From contig NIVC01000180.1 of NCBI GenBank assembly GCA_002269645.1, positions 558,001 to 622,000 on the forward strand: a stretch of 64,000 nucleotides of DNA, read 5' to 3'. The notes below the pieces were generated by a model that saw only the letters and a list, made by a program, of their open reading frames with translations, did not search any database and was not told where the DNA came from. Source of the DNA: Macrostomum lignano. Lineage: Eukaryota. This document shows positions 84-52,515 of this stretch, one piece after another. Position numbers and translations under genes: made by a program. Position 1 is the stretch's first letter. Every line of letters starts with the position of its first letter.

Positions 84-932
84 GATCTCAGTTTCAGATC
101 CAATAGATCTCAATCTCACACCCAACAGATCTCAATCTCACACCCAACAGATCTCAATCTCACACCCAAAAGATCTGTCTCACACCCAACAGATCTCAAT
201 CTCACACCCAACAGATCTCAGTCTCAGATCCAACAGATCTGTCTCACACCCAACAGATCTCAATCTCACACCCAACAGATCTCAATCTCACACCCAACAG
301 ATCTCAATCTCACACCCAAAAGATCTGTCTCACACCCAACAGATCTCAATCTCACACCCAACAGATCTCAGTCTCAGATCCAACAGATCTGTCTCACACC
401 CAACAGATCTCAATCTCACACCCAACAGATCTCAATCTCACACCCAACAGATCTCAATCTCACACCCAACAGATCTGTCTCACACCCAACAGATCTCAAT
501 CTCACACCCAACAGATCTCAGTCTCAGATCCAACAGATCTCAATCTCACACCCAACGGATCTCAGTCTCAGATCCAATAGATCTCAATCTCACACCCAAC
601 AGATCTCAATCTCACACCCAACGGATCTCAGTCTCAGACCCAACAGATCTCAGTCTCACACCCAACAGATCTCAATCTCACACCCAACAGACCTCAGTCT
701 CACACCCAACAGACCTCAGTCTCAGATTCAACAGATCTCAATCTCACACCCAACAGACCTCAGTCTCAGATTCAACAGATCTCAATCTCACACCCAACGG
801 ATCTCAGTCTCAGATCCAACAGATCTCAATGTCACACCTAACAGATCTCAGTCTCAGATCCAACAGATCTCAATCTCACACCCAACGGATCTCAGTCTCA
901 GATCCAACAGATCTCAATCTCACACCCAACAG
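84..932. repeat. Minisatellite, 22-nt unit AGATCTCAATCTCACACCCAAC
   Basis: Direct tandem units with variants, ending just upstream of the DEGS acceptor and ATG. Confidence 0.95.
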
Positions 933-975
933 ATCCAGATTCTCTCGCCACCCTTCACAGCAGCCGGCAGTTGCC

Positions 976-1759
976 ATGAACAGCCCAGCCGAAAATCTCC
1001 GGTGGTCGTTTTTCAACGCGCTGAAGCTGAGCATGAAGCTCGAGCTGGACGCCGACACGTGGGAGTACAACGAGGAACCTCATGTGACCAGGCGGCGGGA
1101 GATCCTGGCAAAGTATCCCCAGATTAAGAAGCTGATGGGCTACGATCCCAGAATTGCTCTGGTGGTCAGCGCAGAGGTTCTCATCCAGCTGCTGATCTGT
1201 CAGGTGATCTCGCAGGCCAACCCGTCCTGGGGCTGGTTGGTGCTGCTGGCGTACGTGGTTGGAGCCACTCTGAACCACAGCCTGGCCTCCGCCATTCACG
1301 AAATCGGTAGGTGGATTGCTGGGTAGGTTGGTGAGTAGATTGTTGGGTAGGTTGGTGGGTAGATTGTTGGGTAGGTTGGTGAGTAGATTGTTGGGTAGGT
1401 TGGTGGGTAGATTGTTGGGTAGGTTGGTGGGTAGATTGTTGGGTAGGTTGGTGGGTAGATTGTTGGGTAGGTTGGTGGGTAGATTGTTGGGTAGGTTGGT
1501 GGGTAGATTGTTGGGTAGGTTGGTGGGTAGATATCTGGTGGGTTAGCGGGTAGATTGCTGGGTAGGTTGGTGGGTAGATTTCTGGTGGGTTAGCGGGTAG
1601 ATTGCTGGGTAGGTTGGTGGGTAGATCGCCGGGTGGCGCGAGGTACGTTCGCGAGTGGAATGACAGTGAGCAACCTTTTTGGAGAGAATTTCCAAAGTAT
1701 TAGTAATGTATTAATGGATTTACTAGCGAGTAGATTAGCGAGTAGCTCGGTGGGCAGAT

Positions 1760-4870: not shown

Positions 4871-5317
4871 CTTCCCTGAACAATCCTCATGAGCACTTCC
4901 CTGAGCATCTCTTTCAGCACTCCCTCGAATGGTACTCCCTGCGACTCTGTCAACAATTTAATAAACTTGTTTTTGCATATCAAAATGTAGAATACCGTTA
5001 GCCATTGCTATTTTTGGTGTGCATTGATTTACAATTGCTTTGAATACACGCAGTCCCTCATTAGTTTTTTATTCAGAGCGAAGCTCCTTGAGAGCGGGAG
5101 CAGCAAGCTGCTTCAGAAATCAGAAACTCAAATAAATAAAAAATTGTTGATTTTTTTGAAGAAGAGAATGGCCGTGGCTGCTTTATTGCGCAAAAAATTC
5201 ATCAGATTGATTATCGTTTATTGTTTATCAGTCCGATTCCCCACAAGTCAGCCGAAAATCTCCCCGCCCAAGTTGTAGAGGTTTACTCCGTGTGAAACAC
5301 GAAACACCTGGAAATAT

Positions 5318-6001
5318 TTAATTGTGATCAGCAGCCTCCCCTGGTTCTATATCTAATCCCTGTCGCTTCCCCAGTCGGACAAAGCTCGGACGTTTACCCA
5401 GTCGGACAAAGCTCGGACGTTTCCCCAGTCGGACAAAGCTCGGACGTTTCCCAAGTCGGACAAAGCTCGGACGTTTACCCAGTCGGAAAAAGCTCGGACG
5501 TTTACCCAGTCGGACAAAGCTCGGACGTTTACCCAGTCGGACAAAGCTCGGACGTTTACCCAGTCGGACAAAGCTCGGACGTTTACCCAGTCGGACAAAG
5601 CTCGGACGTTTACCCAGTCGGACAAAGCTCGGACGTTTCCCCAGTCGGACAAAGCTCGGACGTTTCCCCAGTCGGACAAAGCTCGGACGTTTACCCAGTC
5701 GGACAAAGCTCGGACGTTTACCCAGTCGGACAAAGCTCGGACGTTTCCCCAGTCGGACAAAGCTCGGACGTTTCCCCAGTCGGACAAAGCTCGGACGCTT
5801 ATCAATATCACCGCCCTGTAGGCTTTCAGCGGCCGAGTCCTGCATCAGCCAGGAGTCCCGGGCGGTCGAGGGCTCCTCCACCGCGGCGTCACTGAGACTC
5901 GCTGACGGCACTTCGCCAGAGCTGGCGGCCAGGGCGAGCGGCAGCAGGGCGGCCAGGGCGAGCGGCAGCAGGGCGGCCAGCAGCAGCGGCATGCAGCGCA
6001 T
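5318..6001 (-). CDS. npp-1: Neuropeptide prepropeptide, FVRIamide/FxRIamide (flatworm npp-1-like) family: signal peptide, acidic spacer, 16 x PSF(V/F)RL-G-KR
   Basis: True ATG in gccATG context, then a hydrophobic signal (MRCMPLLLAALLPLALAALLPLALAASS). After DIDKR come 16 tandem 27-nt units, each encoding PSFVRL plus Gly (amide donor) plus a KR dibasic site. Unit differences are mostly synonymous (GGT/GGG, CTG/CTT), with one V>F. An acceptor ttttag lies 28 nt before the ATG and an AATAAA about 95 nt after the stop. The family name rests on recalled similarity to FVRI/FVRL-amides. Confidence 0.9.
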   Translation of the reverse strand: MRCMPLLLAALLPLALAALLPLALAASSGEVPSASLSDAAVEEPSTARDSWLMQDSAAESLQGGDIDKRPSFVRLGKRPSFVRLGKRPSFVRLGKRPSFVRLGKRPSFVRLGKRPSFVRLGKRPSFVRLGKRPSFVRLGKRPSFVRLGKRPSFVRLGKRPSFVRLGKRPSFFRLGKRPSFVRLGKRPSFVRLGKRPSFVRLGKRPSFVRLGKRQGLDIEPGEAADHN

Positions 6002-6300
6002 GGCTGTTCGGTCAGCTCCGGATGCACTCCTAAAACGGTTGAAGATCCAATCGGTTCAATTCAGTCAGACAGCGCTCAAAATCAGCAACCAACTCACTTG
6101 AAAAATTTGATAAACTCGCAAATCCGAATGAAATTTCCTTGGAAGCAGAAGCAGCAGACAGCAGCAAAGGCGGCGGCGGCAGCAGCAAGAAGACAAGCAG
6201 AAGTGGGCGGGCGCTGTTTTCAGCCAGGGATTTCAGTTTCAATCATTGGCTGTCCGGCTGTGCGCCTGTCCGCGAGCGCCAGGGACCGGAGGACTGGCCG

Positions 6301-7115
6301 GGAGCGGCAGTGTGAGATTATCAGAGCGGCAGTGTGAGATTATCAGAGCGGCAGTGTGAGATTATCAGAGCGGCAGTGTGAGATTATCAGAGCGACAGTG
6401 TGAGATTATCAGAGCGGCAGTGTGAGATTATCAGAGCGACAGTGTGAGATTATCAGAGCGGCAGTGTGAGATTATCAGAGCGGCAGTGTGAGATTATCAG
6501 AGCGGCAGTGTGAGATTATCAGAGCGGCAGTGTGAGATTATCAGTGCGGCAGTGTGAGATTATCAGAGCGGCAGTGTGAGATTATCAGAGCGGCAGTGTG
6601 AGATTATCAGTGCGGCAGTGTGAGATTATCAGAGCGGCAGTGTGAGATTATCACAGCAGCAGTGTGAGATTATCAGTGCGGCAGTGTGAGATTATCAGAG
6701 CGGCAGTGTGAGATTATCAGTGCGGCAGTGTGAGATTATCAGAGCGGCAGTGTGAGATTATCACAGCAGCAGTGTGAGATTATCAGTGCGGCAGTGTGAG
6801 ATTATCAGAGCGGCAGTGTGAGATTATCAGTGCGGCAGTGTGAGATTATCAGAGCGGCAGTGTGAGATTATCACAGCAGCAGTGTGAGATTATCAGTGCG
6901 GCAGTGTGAGATTATCAGAGCGGCAGTGTGAGATTATCAGTGCGGCAGTGTGAGATTATCAGAGCGGCAGTGTGAGATTATCACAGCAGCAGTGTGAGAT
7001 TATCAGTGCGGCAGTGTGAGATTATCACAGCAGCAGTGTGAGATTATCAGTGCGGCAGTGTGAGATTATCAGAGCGGCAGTGTGAGATTATCAGTGCGGC
7101 AGTGTGAGATTATTC
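6301..7115. repeat. Minisatellite, 22-nt unit GAGCGGCAGTGTGAGATTATCA
   Basis: Seen directly. Confidence 0.95.
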
Positions 7116-7961
7116 GAGCGTGGCGGCCTGGCCTAAAAGCGACCAAAGAAGCGGTGTTCTCTAATGCTCTCTTGTGGGCCCGAGAGGTCTGTCATTCAGC
7201 AGTTTTTTTGGTTGGATTTTCCATCAGTGTGGCGCAGTTTTGCGAAATCAGACTAAAAATAGCCTCTCTTTGCAATCAAATTTTGCCGTGGATTCCACGA
7301 AACCAGCATGAAAAACTGTTTCTGTTTTGGGCCTAAAAAAACCGACTCATTACGGGCAGATCGCAGGGCGCAGTCTGGAAATTTGAAGTGTTTCAGAATT
7401 TCAACCGGGGGAAGGAGACAGGCAAGAGTGCATCGTAGTGGAACAAGCCAAAATTTGCAGGCAAATTTATTGAAGCAAAACTTTAAACGTTTAAGGAAAC
7501 TGCGAAAGACAAAAAAACTGAACAAACAAGACCCCTTGGCTCACAGACAGGACAGAGCACGTGCAACACACGCGAACAACGAGTCTCAGTCGCCTAGTTT
7601 TGACATTCTGCTGCCATAACCGGGATATATTTGGTATAAAAATCTCCATCTACACTTCGGGTTCACCTCGGCGGTTGCGGAATAACGGAAGAGAAGCAAA
7701 ATCAACGAGCGATTCTTGACGCAAAGTTTTCCGAATTTTGAAGCAACCTGCCTCTTGATTACGCTGGATACTCGCAGGTGTGGAAAAATATTGTGTTCTC
7801 TGTTCCGGAGCAGCAAAATTTAATTGCTGCTTTGCCGTGCTTCCTGCGCTCCGACCGGCCGAAATTTCCTTGGGGAATTGATTTCTGTCCGGGACAAATC
7901 TGCGACCCACCACCTCGGCCTGCATTCGCTTCCACCCACCGTGGCCTTTGAGCTCTATCGG

Positions 7962-14335: not shown

Positions 14336-28011
<13,676 letters not shown>

Positions 28012-30419: not shown

Positions 30420-33400
30420 CTAGTTTTTCTAGTTTCTAGTTTGTGATTATTCTAGAGTTTGTGAAGATTCTACAGTTTGTGAAGATTCTATGGTTTGTGA
30501 AGATTCTAAAGTTTGTGAAGATTCTAGTTTGTGAAGATTCTATAGTTTGTGAAGATTCTATAGTTTGTGAAGATTCTAGTTTGTGAAGATTTTAGTTTTT
30601 GAATATTCTATAGTTTGTGAAGATTCTAGTTTGTGAAGATTCTAGTTTGTGAGGATTCTATAGTTTGTGAAGATTCTAGTTTGTGAAGATTTTAGTTTTT
30701 GAATATTCTATAGTTTGTGAAGATTCTAGTTTGTGAAGATTCTAGTTTGTGAAGATTCTAGTTTGTGAAGATTCTAGTTTGTGAAGATTCTATAGTTTGT
30801 GAAGATTTTACTTTTTTAATATTCTATAGTTTGTGAAGATTCTATAGTTTGTGAAGATTCTATAGTTTGTGAAGATTCTATAGTTTGTGAAGATTCTAGT
30901 TTGTGAAGATTTTAGTTTTTGAATATTCTATAGTTTGTGAAGATTCTATAGTTTGTGAAGATTCTATAGTTTGTGAAGATTCTAGTTTGTGAAGATTCTA
31001 GTTTGTGAGGATTCTATAGTTTGTGAAGATTCTAGTTTGTGAAGATTCTAGTTTGTGAAGATTCTATAGTTTGTGAAGATTCTATAGTTTGTGAAGATTC
31101 TAGTTTGGGAAGATTCTGGTTTGTGAAGGTTCTAGTTTGTGAAGATTCTATGGTTTGTGAAGATTTTAGTTTGTGAAGATTCTACAGTTTGTGAAGATTC
31201 TAGTTTGTGAAGATTCTATAGTTTGTGAAGATTCTAGTTTGTGAAGATTCTAGTTTGTGAAGATTCTACAGTTTGTGAAGATTCTAGTTTGTGAAGATTC
31301 TATAGTTTGTGAAGATTCTATAGTTTGTGAAGATTCTATAGTTTGTGAAGATTCTATAGTTTGTGAAGATTTTAGTTTGTGAAGATTCTATGGTTTGTGA
31401 AGATTCTAAAGTTTGTGAAGATTCTATAGTTTGTGAAGATTCTATAGTTTGTGAAGATTCTATAGTTTGTGAAGATTCTAGTTTGTGAAGATTTTAGTTT
31501 TTGAATATTCTATAGTTTGTGAAGATTCTAGTTTGTGAAGATTCTAGTTTGTGAGGATTCTATAGTTTGTGAAGATTCTAGTTTGTGAAGATTTTAGTTT
31601 TTGAATATTCTATAGTTTGTGAAGATTCTAGTTTGTGAAGATTCTAGTTTGTGAAGATTCTAGTTTGTGAAGATTCTAGTTTGTGAAGATTCTATAGTTT
31701 GTGAAGATTTTACTTTTTTAATATTCTATAGTTTGTGAAGATTCTATAGTTTGTGAAGATTCTATAGTTTGTGAAGATTCTATAGTTTGTGAAGATTCTA
31801 GTTTGTGAAGATTCTATAGTTTGTGAAGATTCTATAGTTTGTGAAGATTCTAGTTTGGGAAGATTCTGGTTTGTGAAGGTTCTAGTTTGTGAAGATTCTA
31901 TGGTTTGTGAAGATTTTAGTTTGTGAAGATTCTACAGTTTGTGAAGATTCTAGTTTGTGAAGATTCTATAGTTTGTGAAGATTCTAGTTTGTGAAGATTC
32001 TAGTTTGTGAAGATTCTACAGTTTGTGAAGATTCTAGTTTGTGAAGATTCTATAGTTTGTGAAGATTCTATAGTTTGTGAAGATTCTATAGTTTGTGAAG
32101 ATTCTATAGTTTGTGAAGATTTTAGTTTGTGAATATTCTATAGTTTGTGAAGATTCTAGTTTGTGAAGATTCTAGTTTGTGAAGATTCTATGGTTTGTGA
32201 AGATTCTATAGTTTGTGAAGATTCTATAGTTTGTGAAGATTCTATAGTTTGTGAAGATTCTATAGTTTGTGAAGATTCTATAGTTTGTGAAGATTCTATA
32301 GTTTGTGAAGATTCTATAGTTTGTGAAGATTCTATAGTTTGTGAAGGTTCTAGTTTGTGAAGATTCTAGTTTGTGAAGATTCTATGGTTTGTGAAGATTC
32401 TATAGTTTGTGAAGATTCTATGGTTTGTGAAGATTCTATGGTTTGTGAAGATTCTAGTTTGTGAAGATTCTATAGTTTGTGAAGATTCTATAGTTTGTGA
32501 GGATTCTATAGTTTGTGAAGATTCTATAGTTTGTGAAGATTCTAGTTTGTGAAGGTTCTAGTTTGTGAAGATTCTAGTTTGTGAAGATTCTAGTTTGTGA
32601 AGATTCTAGTTTGTGAAGATTCTATAGTTTGTGAAGATTCTATAGTTTGTGAAGATTCTAGTTTGGGAAGATTCTGGTTTGTGAAGATTCTATGGTTTGT
32701 GAAGATTTTAGTTTGTGAAGATTCTACAGTTTGTGAAGATTCTAGTTTGTGAAGATTCTATAGTTTGTGAAGATTCTAGTTTGTGAAGATTCTAGTTTGT
32801 GAAGATTCTACAGTTTGTGAAGATTCTAGTTTGTGAAGATTCTATAGTTTGTGAAGATTCTATAGTTTGTGAAGATTCTATAGTTTGTGAAGATTCTATA
32901 GTTTGTGAAGATTTTAGTTTGTGAATATTCTATAGTTTGTGAAGATTCTAGTTTGTGAAGATTCTAGTTTGTGAAGATTCTATGGTTTGTGAAGATTCTA
33001 TAGTTTGTGAAGATTCTATAGTTTGTGAAGATTCTATAGTTTGTGAAGATTCTATAGTTTGTGAAGATTCTATAGTTTGTGAATATTCTATAGTTTGTGA
33101 AGATTCTATAGTTTGTGAAGATTCTATAGTTTGTGAAGGTTCTAGTTTGTGAAGATTCTAGTTTGTGAAGATTCTATGGTTTGTGAAGATTCTATAGTTT
33201 GTGAAGATTCTATGGTTTGTGAAGATTCTATGGTTTGTGAAGATTCTAGTTTGTGAAGATTCTATAGTTTGTGAAGATTCTATAGTTTGTGAAGATTCTA
33301 TAGTTTGTGAGGATTCTATAGTTTGTGAAGATTCTATAGTTTGTGAAGATTCTAGTTTGTGAAGGTTCTAGTTTGTGAAGATTCTAGTTTGTGAAGATTC

Positions 33401-34058
33401 TAGTTTGTGAAGATTCTATAGTTTGTGAAGATTCTATAGTTTGTGAAGATTCTAGTTTGGGAAGATTCTGGTTTGTGAAGGTTCTAGTTTGTGAAGATTC
33501 TATGGTTTGTGAAGATTCTAGTTTGTGAAGATTCTATGGTTTGTGAAGATTCTAGTTTGTGAAGATTCTATGGTTTGTGAAGATTCTATAGTTTGTGAAG
33601 ATTCTAGTTTGTGAAGGTTCTAGTTTGTGAAGATTCTAGTTTGTGAAGATTCTATGGTTTGTAAAGATTCTATAGTTTGTGAAGATTCTATGGTTTGTGA
33701 AGATTCTATAGTTTGTGAAGATTCTAGTTTGTGAAGGTTCTAGTTTGTGAAGATTCTAGTTTGTGAAGATTCTAGTTTGTGAAGATTCTATGGTTTGTGA
33801 AGATTCTATAGTTTGTGAAGATTCTATAGTTTGTGAAGATTCTAGTTTGTGAAGATTCTGGTTTGTGAAGGTTCTAGTTTGTGAATATTTTAGTTTGTGA
33901 AGATTCTAGTTTGTGAAGATTCTATGGTTTGTGAAGATTCTATGGTTTGTGAAGATTCTATAGTTTGTGAAGATTCTAGTTTGTGAAGGTTCTAGTTTGT
34001 GAAGATTCTAGTTTGTGAAGATTCTAATTTTGTGAAGTTTGTGAAGATTGTTTGTGAA
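30420..34058. repeat. 3.6-kb satellite of mixed 15/17-nt units AGTTTGTGAAGATTCT(AT) with higher-order structure
   Basis: The rare variant ttgggaagattctgg recurs near 31105, 31855, 32663 and 33457. Confidence 0.96.

Positions 34059-38269: not shown

Positions 38270-52515
<14,246 letters not shown>

What the first reader, a model, noticed from the sequence alone, without database searches (positions are those of the whole stretch)
5318..6001. 16-copy PSFVRLamide neuropeptide precursor hidden among non-coding minisatellites
At DNA level this looks like one more 27-nt minisatellite. It actually reads as signal peptide, acidic spacer and 16 units of PSF(V/F)RL-G-KR, predicting 15 PSFVRL-NH2 and one PSFFRL-NH2 (unit 12). 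Most unit variation is synonymous (GGT/GGG, CTG/CTT), which argues for coding constraint. From established knowledge, G-KR marks amidation and convertase cleavage, and FVRI/FVRL-amides occur in molluscs, annelids and flatworms (npp-1-like). The spacer-free, homogenised architecture suggests dosage amplification by repeat expansion and possible copy-number polymorphism (inference). Repeat-masked annotation could miss it.
Basis: partly seen in the sequence, partly recalled or inferred. Interest (0 to 1): 0.72.

Follow-up and report, generated by a model that had tools for sequence, protein, structure and literature searches.

The report
Flatworm FVRL-amide neuropeptide precursor gene
The 27-base repeat is a real gene of the flatworm Macrostomum lignano that should yield 16 copies of a small amidated signalling peptide; it belongs to a known neuropeptide family and already has a truncated database entry, so it is sound but ordinary.

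Summary
Window 5318-6001 (minus strand) is an intact 227-aa ORF. It encodes a signal-like N-terminus, an acidic propeptide, KR, then 16 spacer-free units of PSF(V/F)RL-G-KR (unit 12 is PSFFRL), and a short acidic tail.

The window is Macrostomum lignano assembly Mlig_3_7, contig NIVC01000180.1. The neuropeptide reading is well supported:
- Paralogues and environmental homologues keep SFVRLG unchanged through 277 synonymous and 0 non-synonymous codon differences.
- A paralogue encodes ASFVRL-G-KR. ASFVRL-amide was detected by mass spectrometry from planarian Smed-npp-1.
- About 40 mollusc- or annelid-type xSSFVRI-G precursors appear among the top 150 hits of an exhaustive search.
- An RNA-seq-based gene model with a canonical 68-nt 5'UTR intron lies on the minus strand.

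Two corrections. The locus is not unannotated: BOX15_Mlig031594g1 is a "hypothetical protein, partial", and its model skips 297 nt (11 units), leaving only 5. Copy-number polymorphism is not shown; what is shown is 16 versus 9 units between about 98 % identical duplicate loci.

Verdict: a new member of the known npp-1 / FVRIamide family, unusual only in its spacer-free, homogenised array. Peptide processing, amidation and neuronal expression remain inferred.

The parts
6098..6171 (-). 5'UTR exon 1, the minimum extent covered by the deposited model. Conservation with the paralogue continues upstream to about 6300.
   Evidence: The P0001 N-terminus (AFAAV...FFK) is a translation of this stretch spliced to exon 2. 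It is 97-98 % identical to paralogue L002. In the spliced mRNA an in-frame stop lies upstream, with no in-frame ATG before 6001.
6030..6097 (-). 68-nt intron in the 5'UTR, GTGAGT...TTTTAG
   Evidence: Removing exactly these 68 nt is the only way to reproduce the P0001 reading frame. The GT-AG boundaries are canonical, and there is one substitution relative to L002.
5318..6001 (-). Complete coding sequence of the prepropeptide: 227 codons plus TAA, on a single coding exon
   Evidence: ATG context is GCCATGC.
5924..6001 (-). Predicted signal peptide MRCMPLLLAALLPLALAALLPLALAA (cleavage around ALA|A or LAA|S)
   Evidence: One basic residue is followed by an uncharged hydrophobic run of 25 residues (mean Kyte-Doolittle 2.2), with small residues at -3/-1. 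This is a heuristic only; SignalP was not available.
5924..5996 (-). 24-nt tandem duplication inside the signal-peptide coding region. It adds 8 residues (AALLPLAL) relative to the paralogues.
   Evidence: TRF period 24, 3.0 copies. There is a 24-nt gap in L002. P0002 and P0003 lack it.
5801..5923 (-). Acidic propeptide SSGEVPS...GGDID (41 aa; 9 D/E, 1 R; no Cys)
   Evidence: All differences from L002 here are non-synonymous, so constraint is relaxed.
5795..5800 (-). First dibasic (KR) cleavage site, immediately before the array
5363..5794 (-). Array of 16 x 27 nt with no spacers: 15 x PSFVRL-G-KR and 1 x PSFFRL-G-KR. Variant pattern AABBAABBBBBCDABE.
   Evidence: The pattern points to a 4-unit (108-nt) higher-order duplication.
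5471..5497 (-). Unit 12, GTC>TTC, PSFFRL-G-KR
5321..5362 (-). C-terminal acidic peptide QGLDIEPGEAADHN, followed by stop TAA at 5318-5320
   Evidence: It aligns with the MS-detected Smed-npp-1 spacer SRLDYEPVDDYN.
5217..5222 (-). AATAAA poly(A) signal 95 nt after the stop. Further signals lie at 5182-5187 and 5068-5073.
   Evidence: The first is conserved in L002; the second is ATTAAA there.

Best explanation
This is a protein-coding neuropeptide precursor gene of Macrostomum lignano, a derived paralogue of the flatworm npp-1 / lophotrochozoan FVRIamide (S-Iamide) family.

Shown here:
- An intact ORF with a signal-like N-terminus.
- 16 tandem PSF(V/F)RL-Gly-Lys-Arg units.
- A spliced, RNA-seq-derived gene model on the minus strand.
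- Protein-level conservation of xSFVR(L/I)-G-basic units across paralogues and other phyla.

Inferred from established prohormone biochemistry:
- The signal peptide directs the protein into the secretory pathway.
- A PC2-type convertase cuts after each KR, and a carboxypeptidase trims K and R.
- Peptidylglycine alpha-amidating monooxygenase converts the exposed Gly into an amide.
- One precursor then yields 15 PSFVRL-NH2 ([M+H]+ 717.44), one PSFFRL-NH2 (765.44), an acidic N-terminal propeptide and QGLDIEPGEAADHN.

The peptides probably act as neuromodulators through an unidentified receptor, either a GPCR or, as for annelid FVRIamides, a peptide-gated DEG/ENaC channel.

The array evolves like the neighbouring minisatellites, by unit gain, loss and homogenisation, but selection restricts surviving variation to synonymous sites.
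For: Identity and transcription. The window is 100 % identical over 12,171 bp to NIVC01000180.1 of M. lignano Mlig_3_7. The deposited model BOX15_Mlig031594g1 lies on the minus strand with a canonical 68-nt GT-AG 5'UTR intron. That annotation was built from RNA-seq and mapped transcripts (PMC5730564).

Coding constraint:
- In the window and L002 arrays there are 7 synonymous against 2 non-synonymous variant types, where 67-72 % non-synonymous is expected (P = 0.003-0.007).
- Across L003 (M. lignano ASFVRL paralogue), L004 (environmental) and the window unit, codons 2-7 (SFVRLG) show 277 synonymous and 0 non-synonymous codon differences. Ser is AGC here and TCA/TCG elsewhere.
- Outside the units, all four differences from L002 are non-synonymous. 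Constrained peptides with free spacers are the classic prohormone pattern.

Family:
- P0004 matches at E 3e-26.
- Smed-npp-1 matches in pairwise BLASTP at E 5e-12. Its ASFVRL-amide was detected by MS (observed 690.39; PMC2953531 supplement). My calculated mass is 690.418.
- The exhaustive phmmer search returned about 40 xSSFVRIG precursors with 7-19 copies, including Aplysia ACL31530.1, Elysia and Haliotis proteins.
- Annelid PSSFVRIa and ARSGFVRIa are active on peptide-gated channels (PMC9234716).

Specificity: this is the only ORF in the window combining a signal-like N-terminus with repeated GKR sites.
Against: - No peptide, amidation or expression pattern was observed here; these steps are inferred.
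- The signal peptide was judged by a heuristic, not by SignalP. This copy has an 8-residue duplication that gives an unusually long hydrophobic run of 25 uncharged residues (positions 3-27), which could behave as a signal anchor.
- Pro sits at P1' of every KR site. From memory, that position is under-represented at mammalian dibasic sites, although KR-P(S) is common in the invertebrate precursors retrieved.
- The transcript-based model holds only 5 units, so the transcript evidence does not confirm 16.
- The gene lacks the CxxxC...CxxxC pro-domain present in the ASFVRL paralogue and in many FVRIamide precursors.
- phmmer E-values are inflated by periodicity; several top hits are unrelated repeats.
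- M. lignano DEG/ENaC channels tested by others did not respond to the peptides tried, and FVRL-amides were not among those tried.
Confidence: 0.86

Rival explanations
1. It is a non-coding 27-nt minisatellite like its neighbours, and the ORF, the 'signal peptide' and the GKR periodicity arise by chance.
For: 41 % of the window is tandem repeat. Five of the six frames of this array are open, and many other arrays carry long ORFs. Flanking minisatellites also differ in copy number between the paralogues.
Against: The unit peptide is conserved in paralogues and other organisms with completely different codons (277 synonymous against 0 non-synonymous). It matches an MS-verified planarian neuropeptide motif. 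Its unique flanks include an ATG, a hydrophobic leader and a spliced 5'UTR in an RNA-seq-based model. It is the only ORF of 85 with these combined features.
Confidence: 0.02
2. The gene is real, but this copy is a redundant, decaying duplicate in a neopolyploid genome. It may be poorly expressed, or mis-targeted because of the 8-residue duplication in its signal peptide. The functional output would then come from the other copies or from the ASFVRL paralogue.
For: M. lignano has three subgenomes (PMC10733133), and three near-identical copies exist (MRCMP, MRFMP, MRYMP). Only this copy carries the 24-nt duplication and the V>F unit. All non-array differences from L002 are non-synonymous.
Against: The reading frame is intact over 227 codons, with 432 nt of repeat free of any indel. 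The deposited model's gaps add up to exactly 68 + 297 nt, so the underlying transcript contained the 24-nt duplication and therefore came from this copy. Relaxed spacers are normal for prohormones.
Confidence: 0.07
3. The gene is real, but the figure of 16 units is an assembly artefact. The true array could be shorter or longer, and the difference from the paralogue (9) or from the transcript model (5) could be technical.
For: The model built from transcripts contains 5 units here, and 8 of 9 in L002. The older ML2-derived P0003 shows frameshifts inside the array. The genome was hard to assemble (PMC5730564).
Against: The 432-bp array is far shorter than PacBio reads and sits between unique flanks. 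It has an ordered internal variant pattern (AABBAABB...) and no indels. Short-read transcript assembly is expected to collapse such arrays, so the 5-unit model is the likelier artefact.
Confidence: 0.15
4. It is a secreted multi-copy peptide precursor with a non-neuronal role, for example a gland, pharyngeal or antimicrobial peptide rather than a neuropeptide.
For: Smed-npp-1 expression was also reported in the pharynx (PMC2953531). The peptides are short and cationic. No expression data for this gene were available.
Against: Everything reported for this peptide family points to a neuropeptide role. The family was established through S-Iamide peptides isolated from an annelid (title cited in PMC3890597). 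FVRIamides gate annelid peptide-gated DEG/ENaC channels (PMC9234716). FVRIamide is expressed in neuron clusters of a polyclad flatworm larva (PMC13551398). Schistosome npp-1 immunoreactivity in the nervous system is from my memory of McVeigh 2011, which I could not read.
Confidence: 0.05

Closest known systems
Smed-npp-1 (Schmidtea mediterranea neuropeptide precursor-1, GenBank BK007036; Collins et al. 2010, PMC2953531)
   Same: It has a signal peptide, repeated xSFVRL-Gly-basic units and an acidic LD(Y/I)EP-containing peptide near the C-terminus. ASFVRL-amide was confirmed by MS. Pairwise BLASTP gives E 5e-12 to the window protein and 6e-16 to the M. lignano ASFVRL paralogue.
   Different: Smed-npp-1 is 92 aa with 3-4 copies separated by spacers and uses mixed GKR/GR/GKK sites. 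The window gene has 16 identical-length units with no spacer, always G-KR, and Pro instead of Ala at position 1.
Sm-npp-1 / Sj-npp-1 (Schistosoma; Smp_042120), the 'I/L-amides' AFVRL-NH2 and GFVRI-NH2
   Same: Same FVR(L/I)-amide core and the same named family.
   Different: The peptides are pentapeptides without the Ser, and there are few copies. Functional data (nervous-system immunoreactivity, effects on worm motility) come from my memory of McVeigh et al. 2011, which was not readable here.
Lophotrochozoan FVRIamide / S-Iamide precursors (annelid VSSFVRIamide and AKSGFVRIamide from Perinereis; Capitella PSSFVRIa; Platynereis FVRIa; Aplysia 'myomodulin-like neuropeptide 3' ACL31530.1)
   Same: The core is xSFVR(I/L)-Gly-basic, often with an N-terminal Pro (PSSFVRI). 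There are 7-19 copies per precursor, so 16 is typical.
   Different: They end in Ile-amide and have one more Ser. They use many monobasic sites and always have spacers (largest unit-to-unit distance at least 20 residues). Many carry an N-terminal CxxxC...CxxxC pro-domain that the window gene lacks.
M. lignano paralogues BOX15_Mlig018704g1 (L002) and BOX15_Mlig028341g1 (L003)
   Same: L002 is about 98 % identical through the UTR, intron, CDS and flanks, with the same architecture. L003 has the same gene structure (5'UTR intron plus one coding exon) and the SFVRL-G-KR core.
   Different: L002 has 9 units (one is PNFVRL), a different dominant synonymous variant (CTT GGG) and no signal-peptide duplication. 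L003 encodes ASFVRL, with KKKR sites, one spacer, a Cys-containing pro-domain and diverged codons.

Membership tests
Flatworm npp-1 / lophotrochozoan FVRIamide (S-Iamide) neuropeptide precursors | N-terminal signal peptide | tested here: met
   Heuristic only. The sequence is M-R followed by an uncharged hydrophobic run, with A-x-A / A-A-S type cleavage candidates at residues 25-27. SignalP was not available. The run is unusually long because of an 8-residue duplication.
Flatworm npp-1 / lophotrochozoan FVRIamide (S-Iamide) neuropeptide precursors | Multiple copies of x-(S/G/A)-F-V-R-(I/L) followed by Gly and flanked by basic cleavage sites | tested here: met
   16 units of KR|PSF(V/F)RL-G-KR.
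Flatworm npp-1 / lophotrochozoan FVRIamide (S-Iamide) neuropeptide precursors | Sequence similarity to recognised members beyond chance | tested here: met
   P0004 at E 3e-26 in a 5.8-billion-protein search. Smed-npp-1 pairwise at E 5e-12, including the C-terminal LD.EP peptide. About 40 xSSFVRIG precursors, including named Aplysia and Haliotis proteins, appear in the exhaustive phmmer search. Caveat: periodicity inflates the E-values.
Flatworm npp-1 / lophotrochozoan FVRIamide (S-Iamide) neuropeptide precursors | Purifying selection on the peptide units, with relaxed spacers | tested here: met
   277 synonymous against 0 non-synonymous codon differences in SFVRLG across family units. In the two arrays there are 7 synonymous against 2 non-synonymous variant types (P about 0.003-0.007). 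Propeptide differences are all non-synonymous.
Flatworm npp-1 / lophotrochozoan FVRIamide (S-Iamide) neuropeptide precursors | N-terminal CxxxC...CxxxC pro-domain (frequent in the family but not universal) | tested here: not met
   Absent from the window protein and L002. Present in M. lignano P0004 and in P0009/10/23/36/39/46/48/74/85/143. Also absent from Smed-npp-1 and Aplysia P0032, so it is not strictly defining.
Flatworm npp-1 / lophotrochozoan FVRIamide (S-Iamide) neuropeptide precursors | Acidic spacer peptides between at least some copies | tested here: not met
   Every unit-to-unit distance is exactly 9 residues here. Outside the M. lignano PSFVRL models, every FVR(I/L)-type precursor retrieved has a largest unit-to-unit distance of at least 20 residues.
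Flatworm npp-1 / lophotrochozoan FVRIamide (S-Iamide) neuropeptide precursors | Mature C-terminally amidated peptide detectable; expression in neurons | not testable with these tools
   This needs peptidomics and in situ hybridisation. Only indirect support exists: an RNA-seq-based gene model and MS detection of ASFVRL-amide in a planarian.
FMRFamide-like peptides (RFamides; Pfam FARP PF01581) | C-terminal Arg-Phe-amide; match to the FARP profile | tested here: not met
   The peptides end in Arg-Leu-Gly. There is no Pfam hit for the window protein at E <= 1. A relative, P0009, reaches only 13.5 bits against a 15.5 cut-off.
Myomodulin-like / RL-amide group (Collins et al. place npp-1 in an 'RL/RMamide' group; Aplysia homologue is named myomodulin-like neuropeptide 3) | C-terminal R-L-amide; myomodulin core x-M/L-x-M/L-L-R-L-amide | tested here: inconclusive
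   The -RL-Gly end is shared. Retrieved xMRLGKR precursors (P0035, P0069) have a different core and are hit only through the RLGKR periodicity. This is resemblance, not demonstrated membership.
Non-coding minisatellite | No frame-specific constraint; no conservation of a translated product in diverged copies | tested here: not met
   Variation is restricted to synonymous sites of one frame, and the peptide is conserved across different codons.

The most novel reading that the evidence does not exclude
The PSFVRL gene may be a lineage-specific offshoot of the canonical ASFVRL/npp-1 gene. It has lost the Cys pro-domain and all spacers and now evolves as a coding minisatellite. The tandem-repeat instability that fills about 15 % of the M. 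lignano genome would then drive rapid gain and loss of units (16 versus 9 between about 98 % identical subgenome copies). That would give heritable differences in peptide dose between subgenomes and possibly between individuals. The Pro-for-Ala change might also define a separate ligand-receptor pair.
Probability: 0.25. Interest if true: 0.45.

Novelty: new member of a known kind. Interest (0 to 1): 0.25.

Why it matters
The finding corrects a public gene model. BOX15_Mlig031594g1 should be a complete 227-aa prepropeptide with 16 units, not a 162-aa 'partial hypothetical protein' with 5.

It gives M. lignano, the flatworm in which transgenesis works, a named FVRL-amide neuropeptide gene with exact peptide masses, ready for peptidomics, reporter lines and receptor deorphanisation.

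It is also a clean small example of a tandem coding array undergoing concerted evolution under purifying selection, next to neutral minisatellites. It shows that short-read transcript assembly systematically under-counts neuropeptide copies.

It does not reveal a new kind of system.

Tried and rejected
- Exact look-up of the 227-aa product found nothing, because the deposited model is the truncated 162-aa version.
- A profile search with a 40-column alignment of three-to-four-unit segments (A1) returned no hit at E <= 0.001.
- A search with the 78 N-terminal residues also returned nothing, not even P0001, which contains the query verbatim. Both nulls are uninformative, probably because of bias filters.
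- Pfam gives no family for the precursor.
- The key papers McVeigh et al. 2009 (PMC2749192), 2011 (PMC3118037) and 2012 (PMC3862435) are not held. I therefore could not check whether an M. lignano npp-1 EST was already described; what I say about them is from memory.
- No held paper's main text contains 'PSFVRL' or the gene IDs; supplements and unheld papers were not searched.
- I first thought the 22-nt minisatellite upstream (6302-7120) was missing from the paralogue. Searches showed it is present (35.6 versus 37.2 copies), so that idea was dropped.
- The UniProt name 'Secreted protein' for P0003 was not used as signal-peptide evidence. That entry starts in translated 5'UTR and has frameshifts.
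- Top phmmer hits such as P0011-P0016 and P0019 are other periodic repeats or other peptide families. I rejected them as relatives after reading them.

Full report
**What is in the sequence.**

On the minus strand, window 6001 to 5318 is one uninterrupted 227-codon ORF. It reads as follows:
- MRCMPLLLAALLPLALAALLPLALAA, a signal-like leader (5924-6001).
- A 41-residue acidic propeptide with 9 D/E, 1 R and no Cys (5801-5923).
- KR (5795-5800).
- 16 back-to-back 27-nt units (5363-5794).
- QGLDIEPGEAADHN and TAA (5318-5362).

Fifteen units encode PSFVRLGKR, and unit 12 (5471-5497) encodes PSFFRLGKR. TRF reports the array as period 27, 16.0 copies, 97 % matches and no indels. The coordinates and the description in the finding are correct.

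**Is it more than chance?**

An open frame is not evidence here:
- 41 % of the window (44 arrays) is tandem repeat.
- Five of the six frames of this array lack stops.
- Most of the 50 ORFs of at least 150 aa in the window simply run through minisatellites.

The combination of features is what discriminates. Of 85 ATG-initiated ORFs of at least 70 aa, this is the only one with a signal-like N-terminus and repeated G[KR][KR] sites; it has 16. In the spliced mRNA an in-frame stop lies upstream, with no in-frame ATG before 6001. The start context is GCCATGC. AATAAA signals follow the stop at 95 and 130 nt.

**Source and existing annotation.**

The window is 100 % identical over 12,171 bp to contig NIVC01000180.1 of the Macrostomum lignano Mlig_3_7 assembly, GCA_002269645.1, at roughly positions 558,001-622,000.

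GenBank already has a gene here: BOX15_Mlig031594g1, a 'hypothetical protein, partial' of 162 aa (P0001). Reconstructing that model shows three things:
- It spans window 5318-6171.
- It removes a canonical GTGAGT...TTTTAG intron of 68 nt (6030-6097) in the 5'UTR.
- It also removes exactly 297 nt, which is 11 units, inside the array. This leaves 5 units.

The N-terminal 35 residues of the deposited protein are translated 5'UTR.

According to the assembly paper, the annotation was derived from RNA-seq (StringTie/TACO), BLAT-mapped de novo transcripts and TransDecoder (PMC5730564). The model is therefore evidence for a spliced minus-strand transcript. The 297-nt 'intron' is best explained by collapse of the repeat in short-read transcript assembly.

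The two gaps account for all missing bases, so the underlying transcript contained the 24-nt duplication that is specific to this copy.

**Evidence for coding constraint.**

Within the window array there are four synonymous variant types and one non-synonymous type.

Adding the near-identical duplicate locus L002 (NIVC01002097.1) changes the count. Its genomic ORF has 9 units, one of them PNFVRL. The combined arrays give 7 synonymous and 2 non-synonymous variant types, against an expected non-synonymous fraction of 0.67-0.72 (binomial P = 0.003-0.007).

The stronger test uses diverged relatives. One is the M. lignano ASFVRL paralogue (L003, 8 units matched by the scan). The other is an environmental transcript (L004, 4 units matched). 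In both, nearly every codon of the unit varies, yet SFVRLG never changes. That amounts to 277 synonymous against 0 non-synonymous codon differences, and Ser switches between AGC and TCA/TCG.

Outside the units the pattern reverses. All four differences between the window gene and L002 are non-synonymous: C3F, Q>R, D>E and G>E. Constrained peptides embedded in freely evolving spacers are the signature of prohormones.

**Family assignment.**

The first homology search gave M. lignano paralogues and environmental proteins with ASFVRLGKR or PSFIRIGKR units.

The planarian prohormone Smed-npp-1 is printed in the supplement of Collins et al. 2010. It carries ASFVRL-G units, and ASFVRL-amide was detected by mass spectrometry (observed 690.39). 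My calculated mass is 690.418. Pairwise BLASTP gives E 5e-12 for the window protein against Smed-npp-1, and E 6e-16 for P0004 against it. The alignment includes the window C-terminal peptide against the MS-detected spacer SRLDYEPVDDYN. Schistosome npp-1 encodes AFVRL-amide and GFVRI-amide.

An exhaustive phmmer search of 1.84 billion representatives gave 515 hits. Periodicity inflates these, and several top hits are unrelated repeats or other peptide families. About 40 of the top 150 are genuine xSSFVRI-G precursors with 7-19 copies. They include Aplysia 'myomodulin-like neuropeptide 3' and proteins from Elysia and Haliotis.

Annelid S-Iamides (VSSFVRIamide, AKSGFVRIamide) were isolated biochemically (title cited in PMC3890597). 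PSSFVRIa and ARSGFVRIa gate annelid FaNaC-type channels (PMC9234716).

The window gene is therefore a member of the npp-1 / FVRIamide family.

**How it differs from its relatives.**
- It has no spacers at all. Outside the M. lignano PSFVRL models, every FVR(I/L)-type precursor retrieved has at least one gap of 20 residues or more between units.
- It lacks the CxxxC...CxxxC pro-domain found in many family members and in the M. lignano ASFVRL paralogue. That domain is also absent from Smed-npp-1 and the Aplysia protein.
- Its array is nearly homogeneous, with variant pattern AABBAABBBBBCDABE, which suggests a 4-unit higher-order duplication.
- The duplicate locus L002 is 97-98 % identical through the UTR, intron, CDS and flanks. 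It nevertheless has 9 units, with a different dominant synonymous variant (pattern BDFDDDDGH). The two loci share the distinctive last unit ending in AAG CGA.

Interior units have therefore turned over since the duplication, and the edge unit has not. This is concerted evolution. The flanking non-coding minisatellites are conserved in position and also differ in copy number, for example 37.2 versus 35.6 copies of the 22-mer.

M. lignano is reported to have three subgenomes (PMC10733133). That fits the three near-identical copies seen: MRCMP, MRFMP and MRYMP.

**Most likely mechanism.**

Shown: gene structure, transcript model, coding constraint and family membership.

Inferred from established prohormone processing:
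- Co-translational signal-peptide removal.
- Convertase cleavage after each KR.
- Carboxypeptidase trimming.
- Amidation of the exposed Gly.

This would give 15 PSFVRL-NH2 and one PSFFRL-NH2 per precursor. The receptor and the physiological role are unknown.

**Caveats.**
- The signal peptide was judged heuristically.
- This copy has an 8-residue duplication, which gives a long hydrophobic run.
- Pro occupies P1' at every site.
- The figure of 16 rests on the assembly alone.

**Verdict.**

The claim that annotation could miss the gene is only half right: the gene is annotated, but mis-modelled and unnamed. Copy-number polymorphism is not shown; only a difference between duplicate loci is.

This is a new member of a known family in a published genome, and I score interest at 0.25. 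I could not read McVeigh et al. 2009, so I cannot exclude that an M. lignano npp-1 EST was already listed there.

Noticed in passing
window 5924-5996: A 24-nt tandem duplication lies inside the signal-peptide coding region and adds AALLPLAL. It is present only in this copy and absent from L002, P0002 and P0003. It lengthens the hydrophobic core to 25 uncharged residues (positions 3-27).
   Followed up: partly
window 14336-15673 (-), with 15038-15264 and 18147-18401 (-): This is the last exon of a rhodopsin-family GPCR, covering TM6-TM7 with NPIIY (Pfam 7tm_1 at E 8.5e-10; PDB hits to aminergic, opioid and GnRH receptors). It lies about 8 kb upstream of the neuropeptide gene on the same strand. 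Its loop region before TM6 is encoded by the 42-nt minisatellite (NRLGNQPADTGNQS repeats). A TM5-like ORF lies at 18147-18401. There is no evidence linking it to the peptide.
   Followed up: partly
window 46400-51042: This looks like a young LTR retrotransposon. Two 242-nt direct repeats, 100 % identical (46400-46641 and 50801-51042), flank an intact 1320-aa gag-protease-RT-RNaseH-integrase ORF (46820-50782, minus strand). Related 18-nt minisatellites sit just outside or inside both ends. The sequence was not printed.
   Followed up: partly
window 829-1326 (+): An ORF matches the N-terminal domain of sphingolipid delta4-desaturase (Pfam Lipid_DES, E 4.5e-17). It is probably an exon of a DES gene lying between minisatellites.
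   Followed up: no
whole window; e.g. 19586-22006, 30434-34037, 39500-42020: 41 % of the window (26,057 nt in 44 arrays) is tandem repeat. This includes (TATC)x605, an 18-mer x 210 and a 22-mer x 114. Many arrays carry long spurious ORFs in several frames.
   Followed up: yes
L002 6001-6644 (NIVC01002097.1): The deposited model of the paralogue (BOX15_Mlig018704g1, P0002) also omits one 27-nt unit. Its gaps are 68 + 27 nt, so it has 8 of the 9 genomic units, and no PNFVRL unit appears in the deposited protein. Under-counting of units seems systematic for this gene family in the annotation.
   Followed up: partly
L004, L006-L008 (JGI samples 3300030743, 3300030741, 3300030589) and L005 (SRR22388065): Short environmental contigs encode complete precursors of two related types, ASFVRLGKR x5 and PSFIRIGKR x3 (plus LRLGRK). 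Both types occur in the same JGI sample. The source organisms are unknown.
   Followed up: no
window 15882-17159: Fragments of transposon-like ORFs, with a retroelement integrase-like motif (...HIPQQNGVAE...), lie inside the presumed GPCR intron. This is judged by eye only.
   Followed up: no
window 45301-45879 (-): An ORF has a weak Rab11-FIP3-like domain match (28.8 bits, below the 31.9 cut-off). It lies next to an (ACAG)n microsatellite.
   Followed up: no
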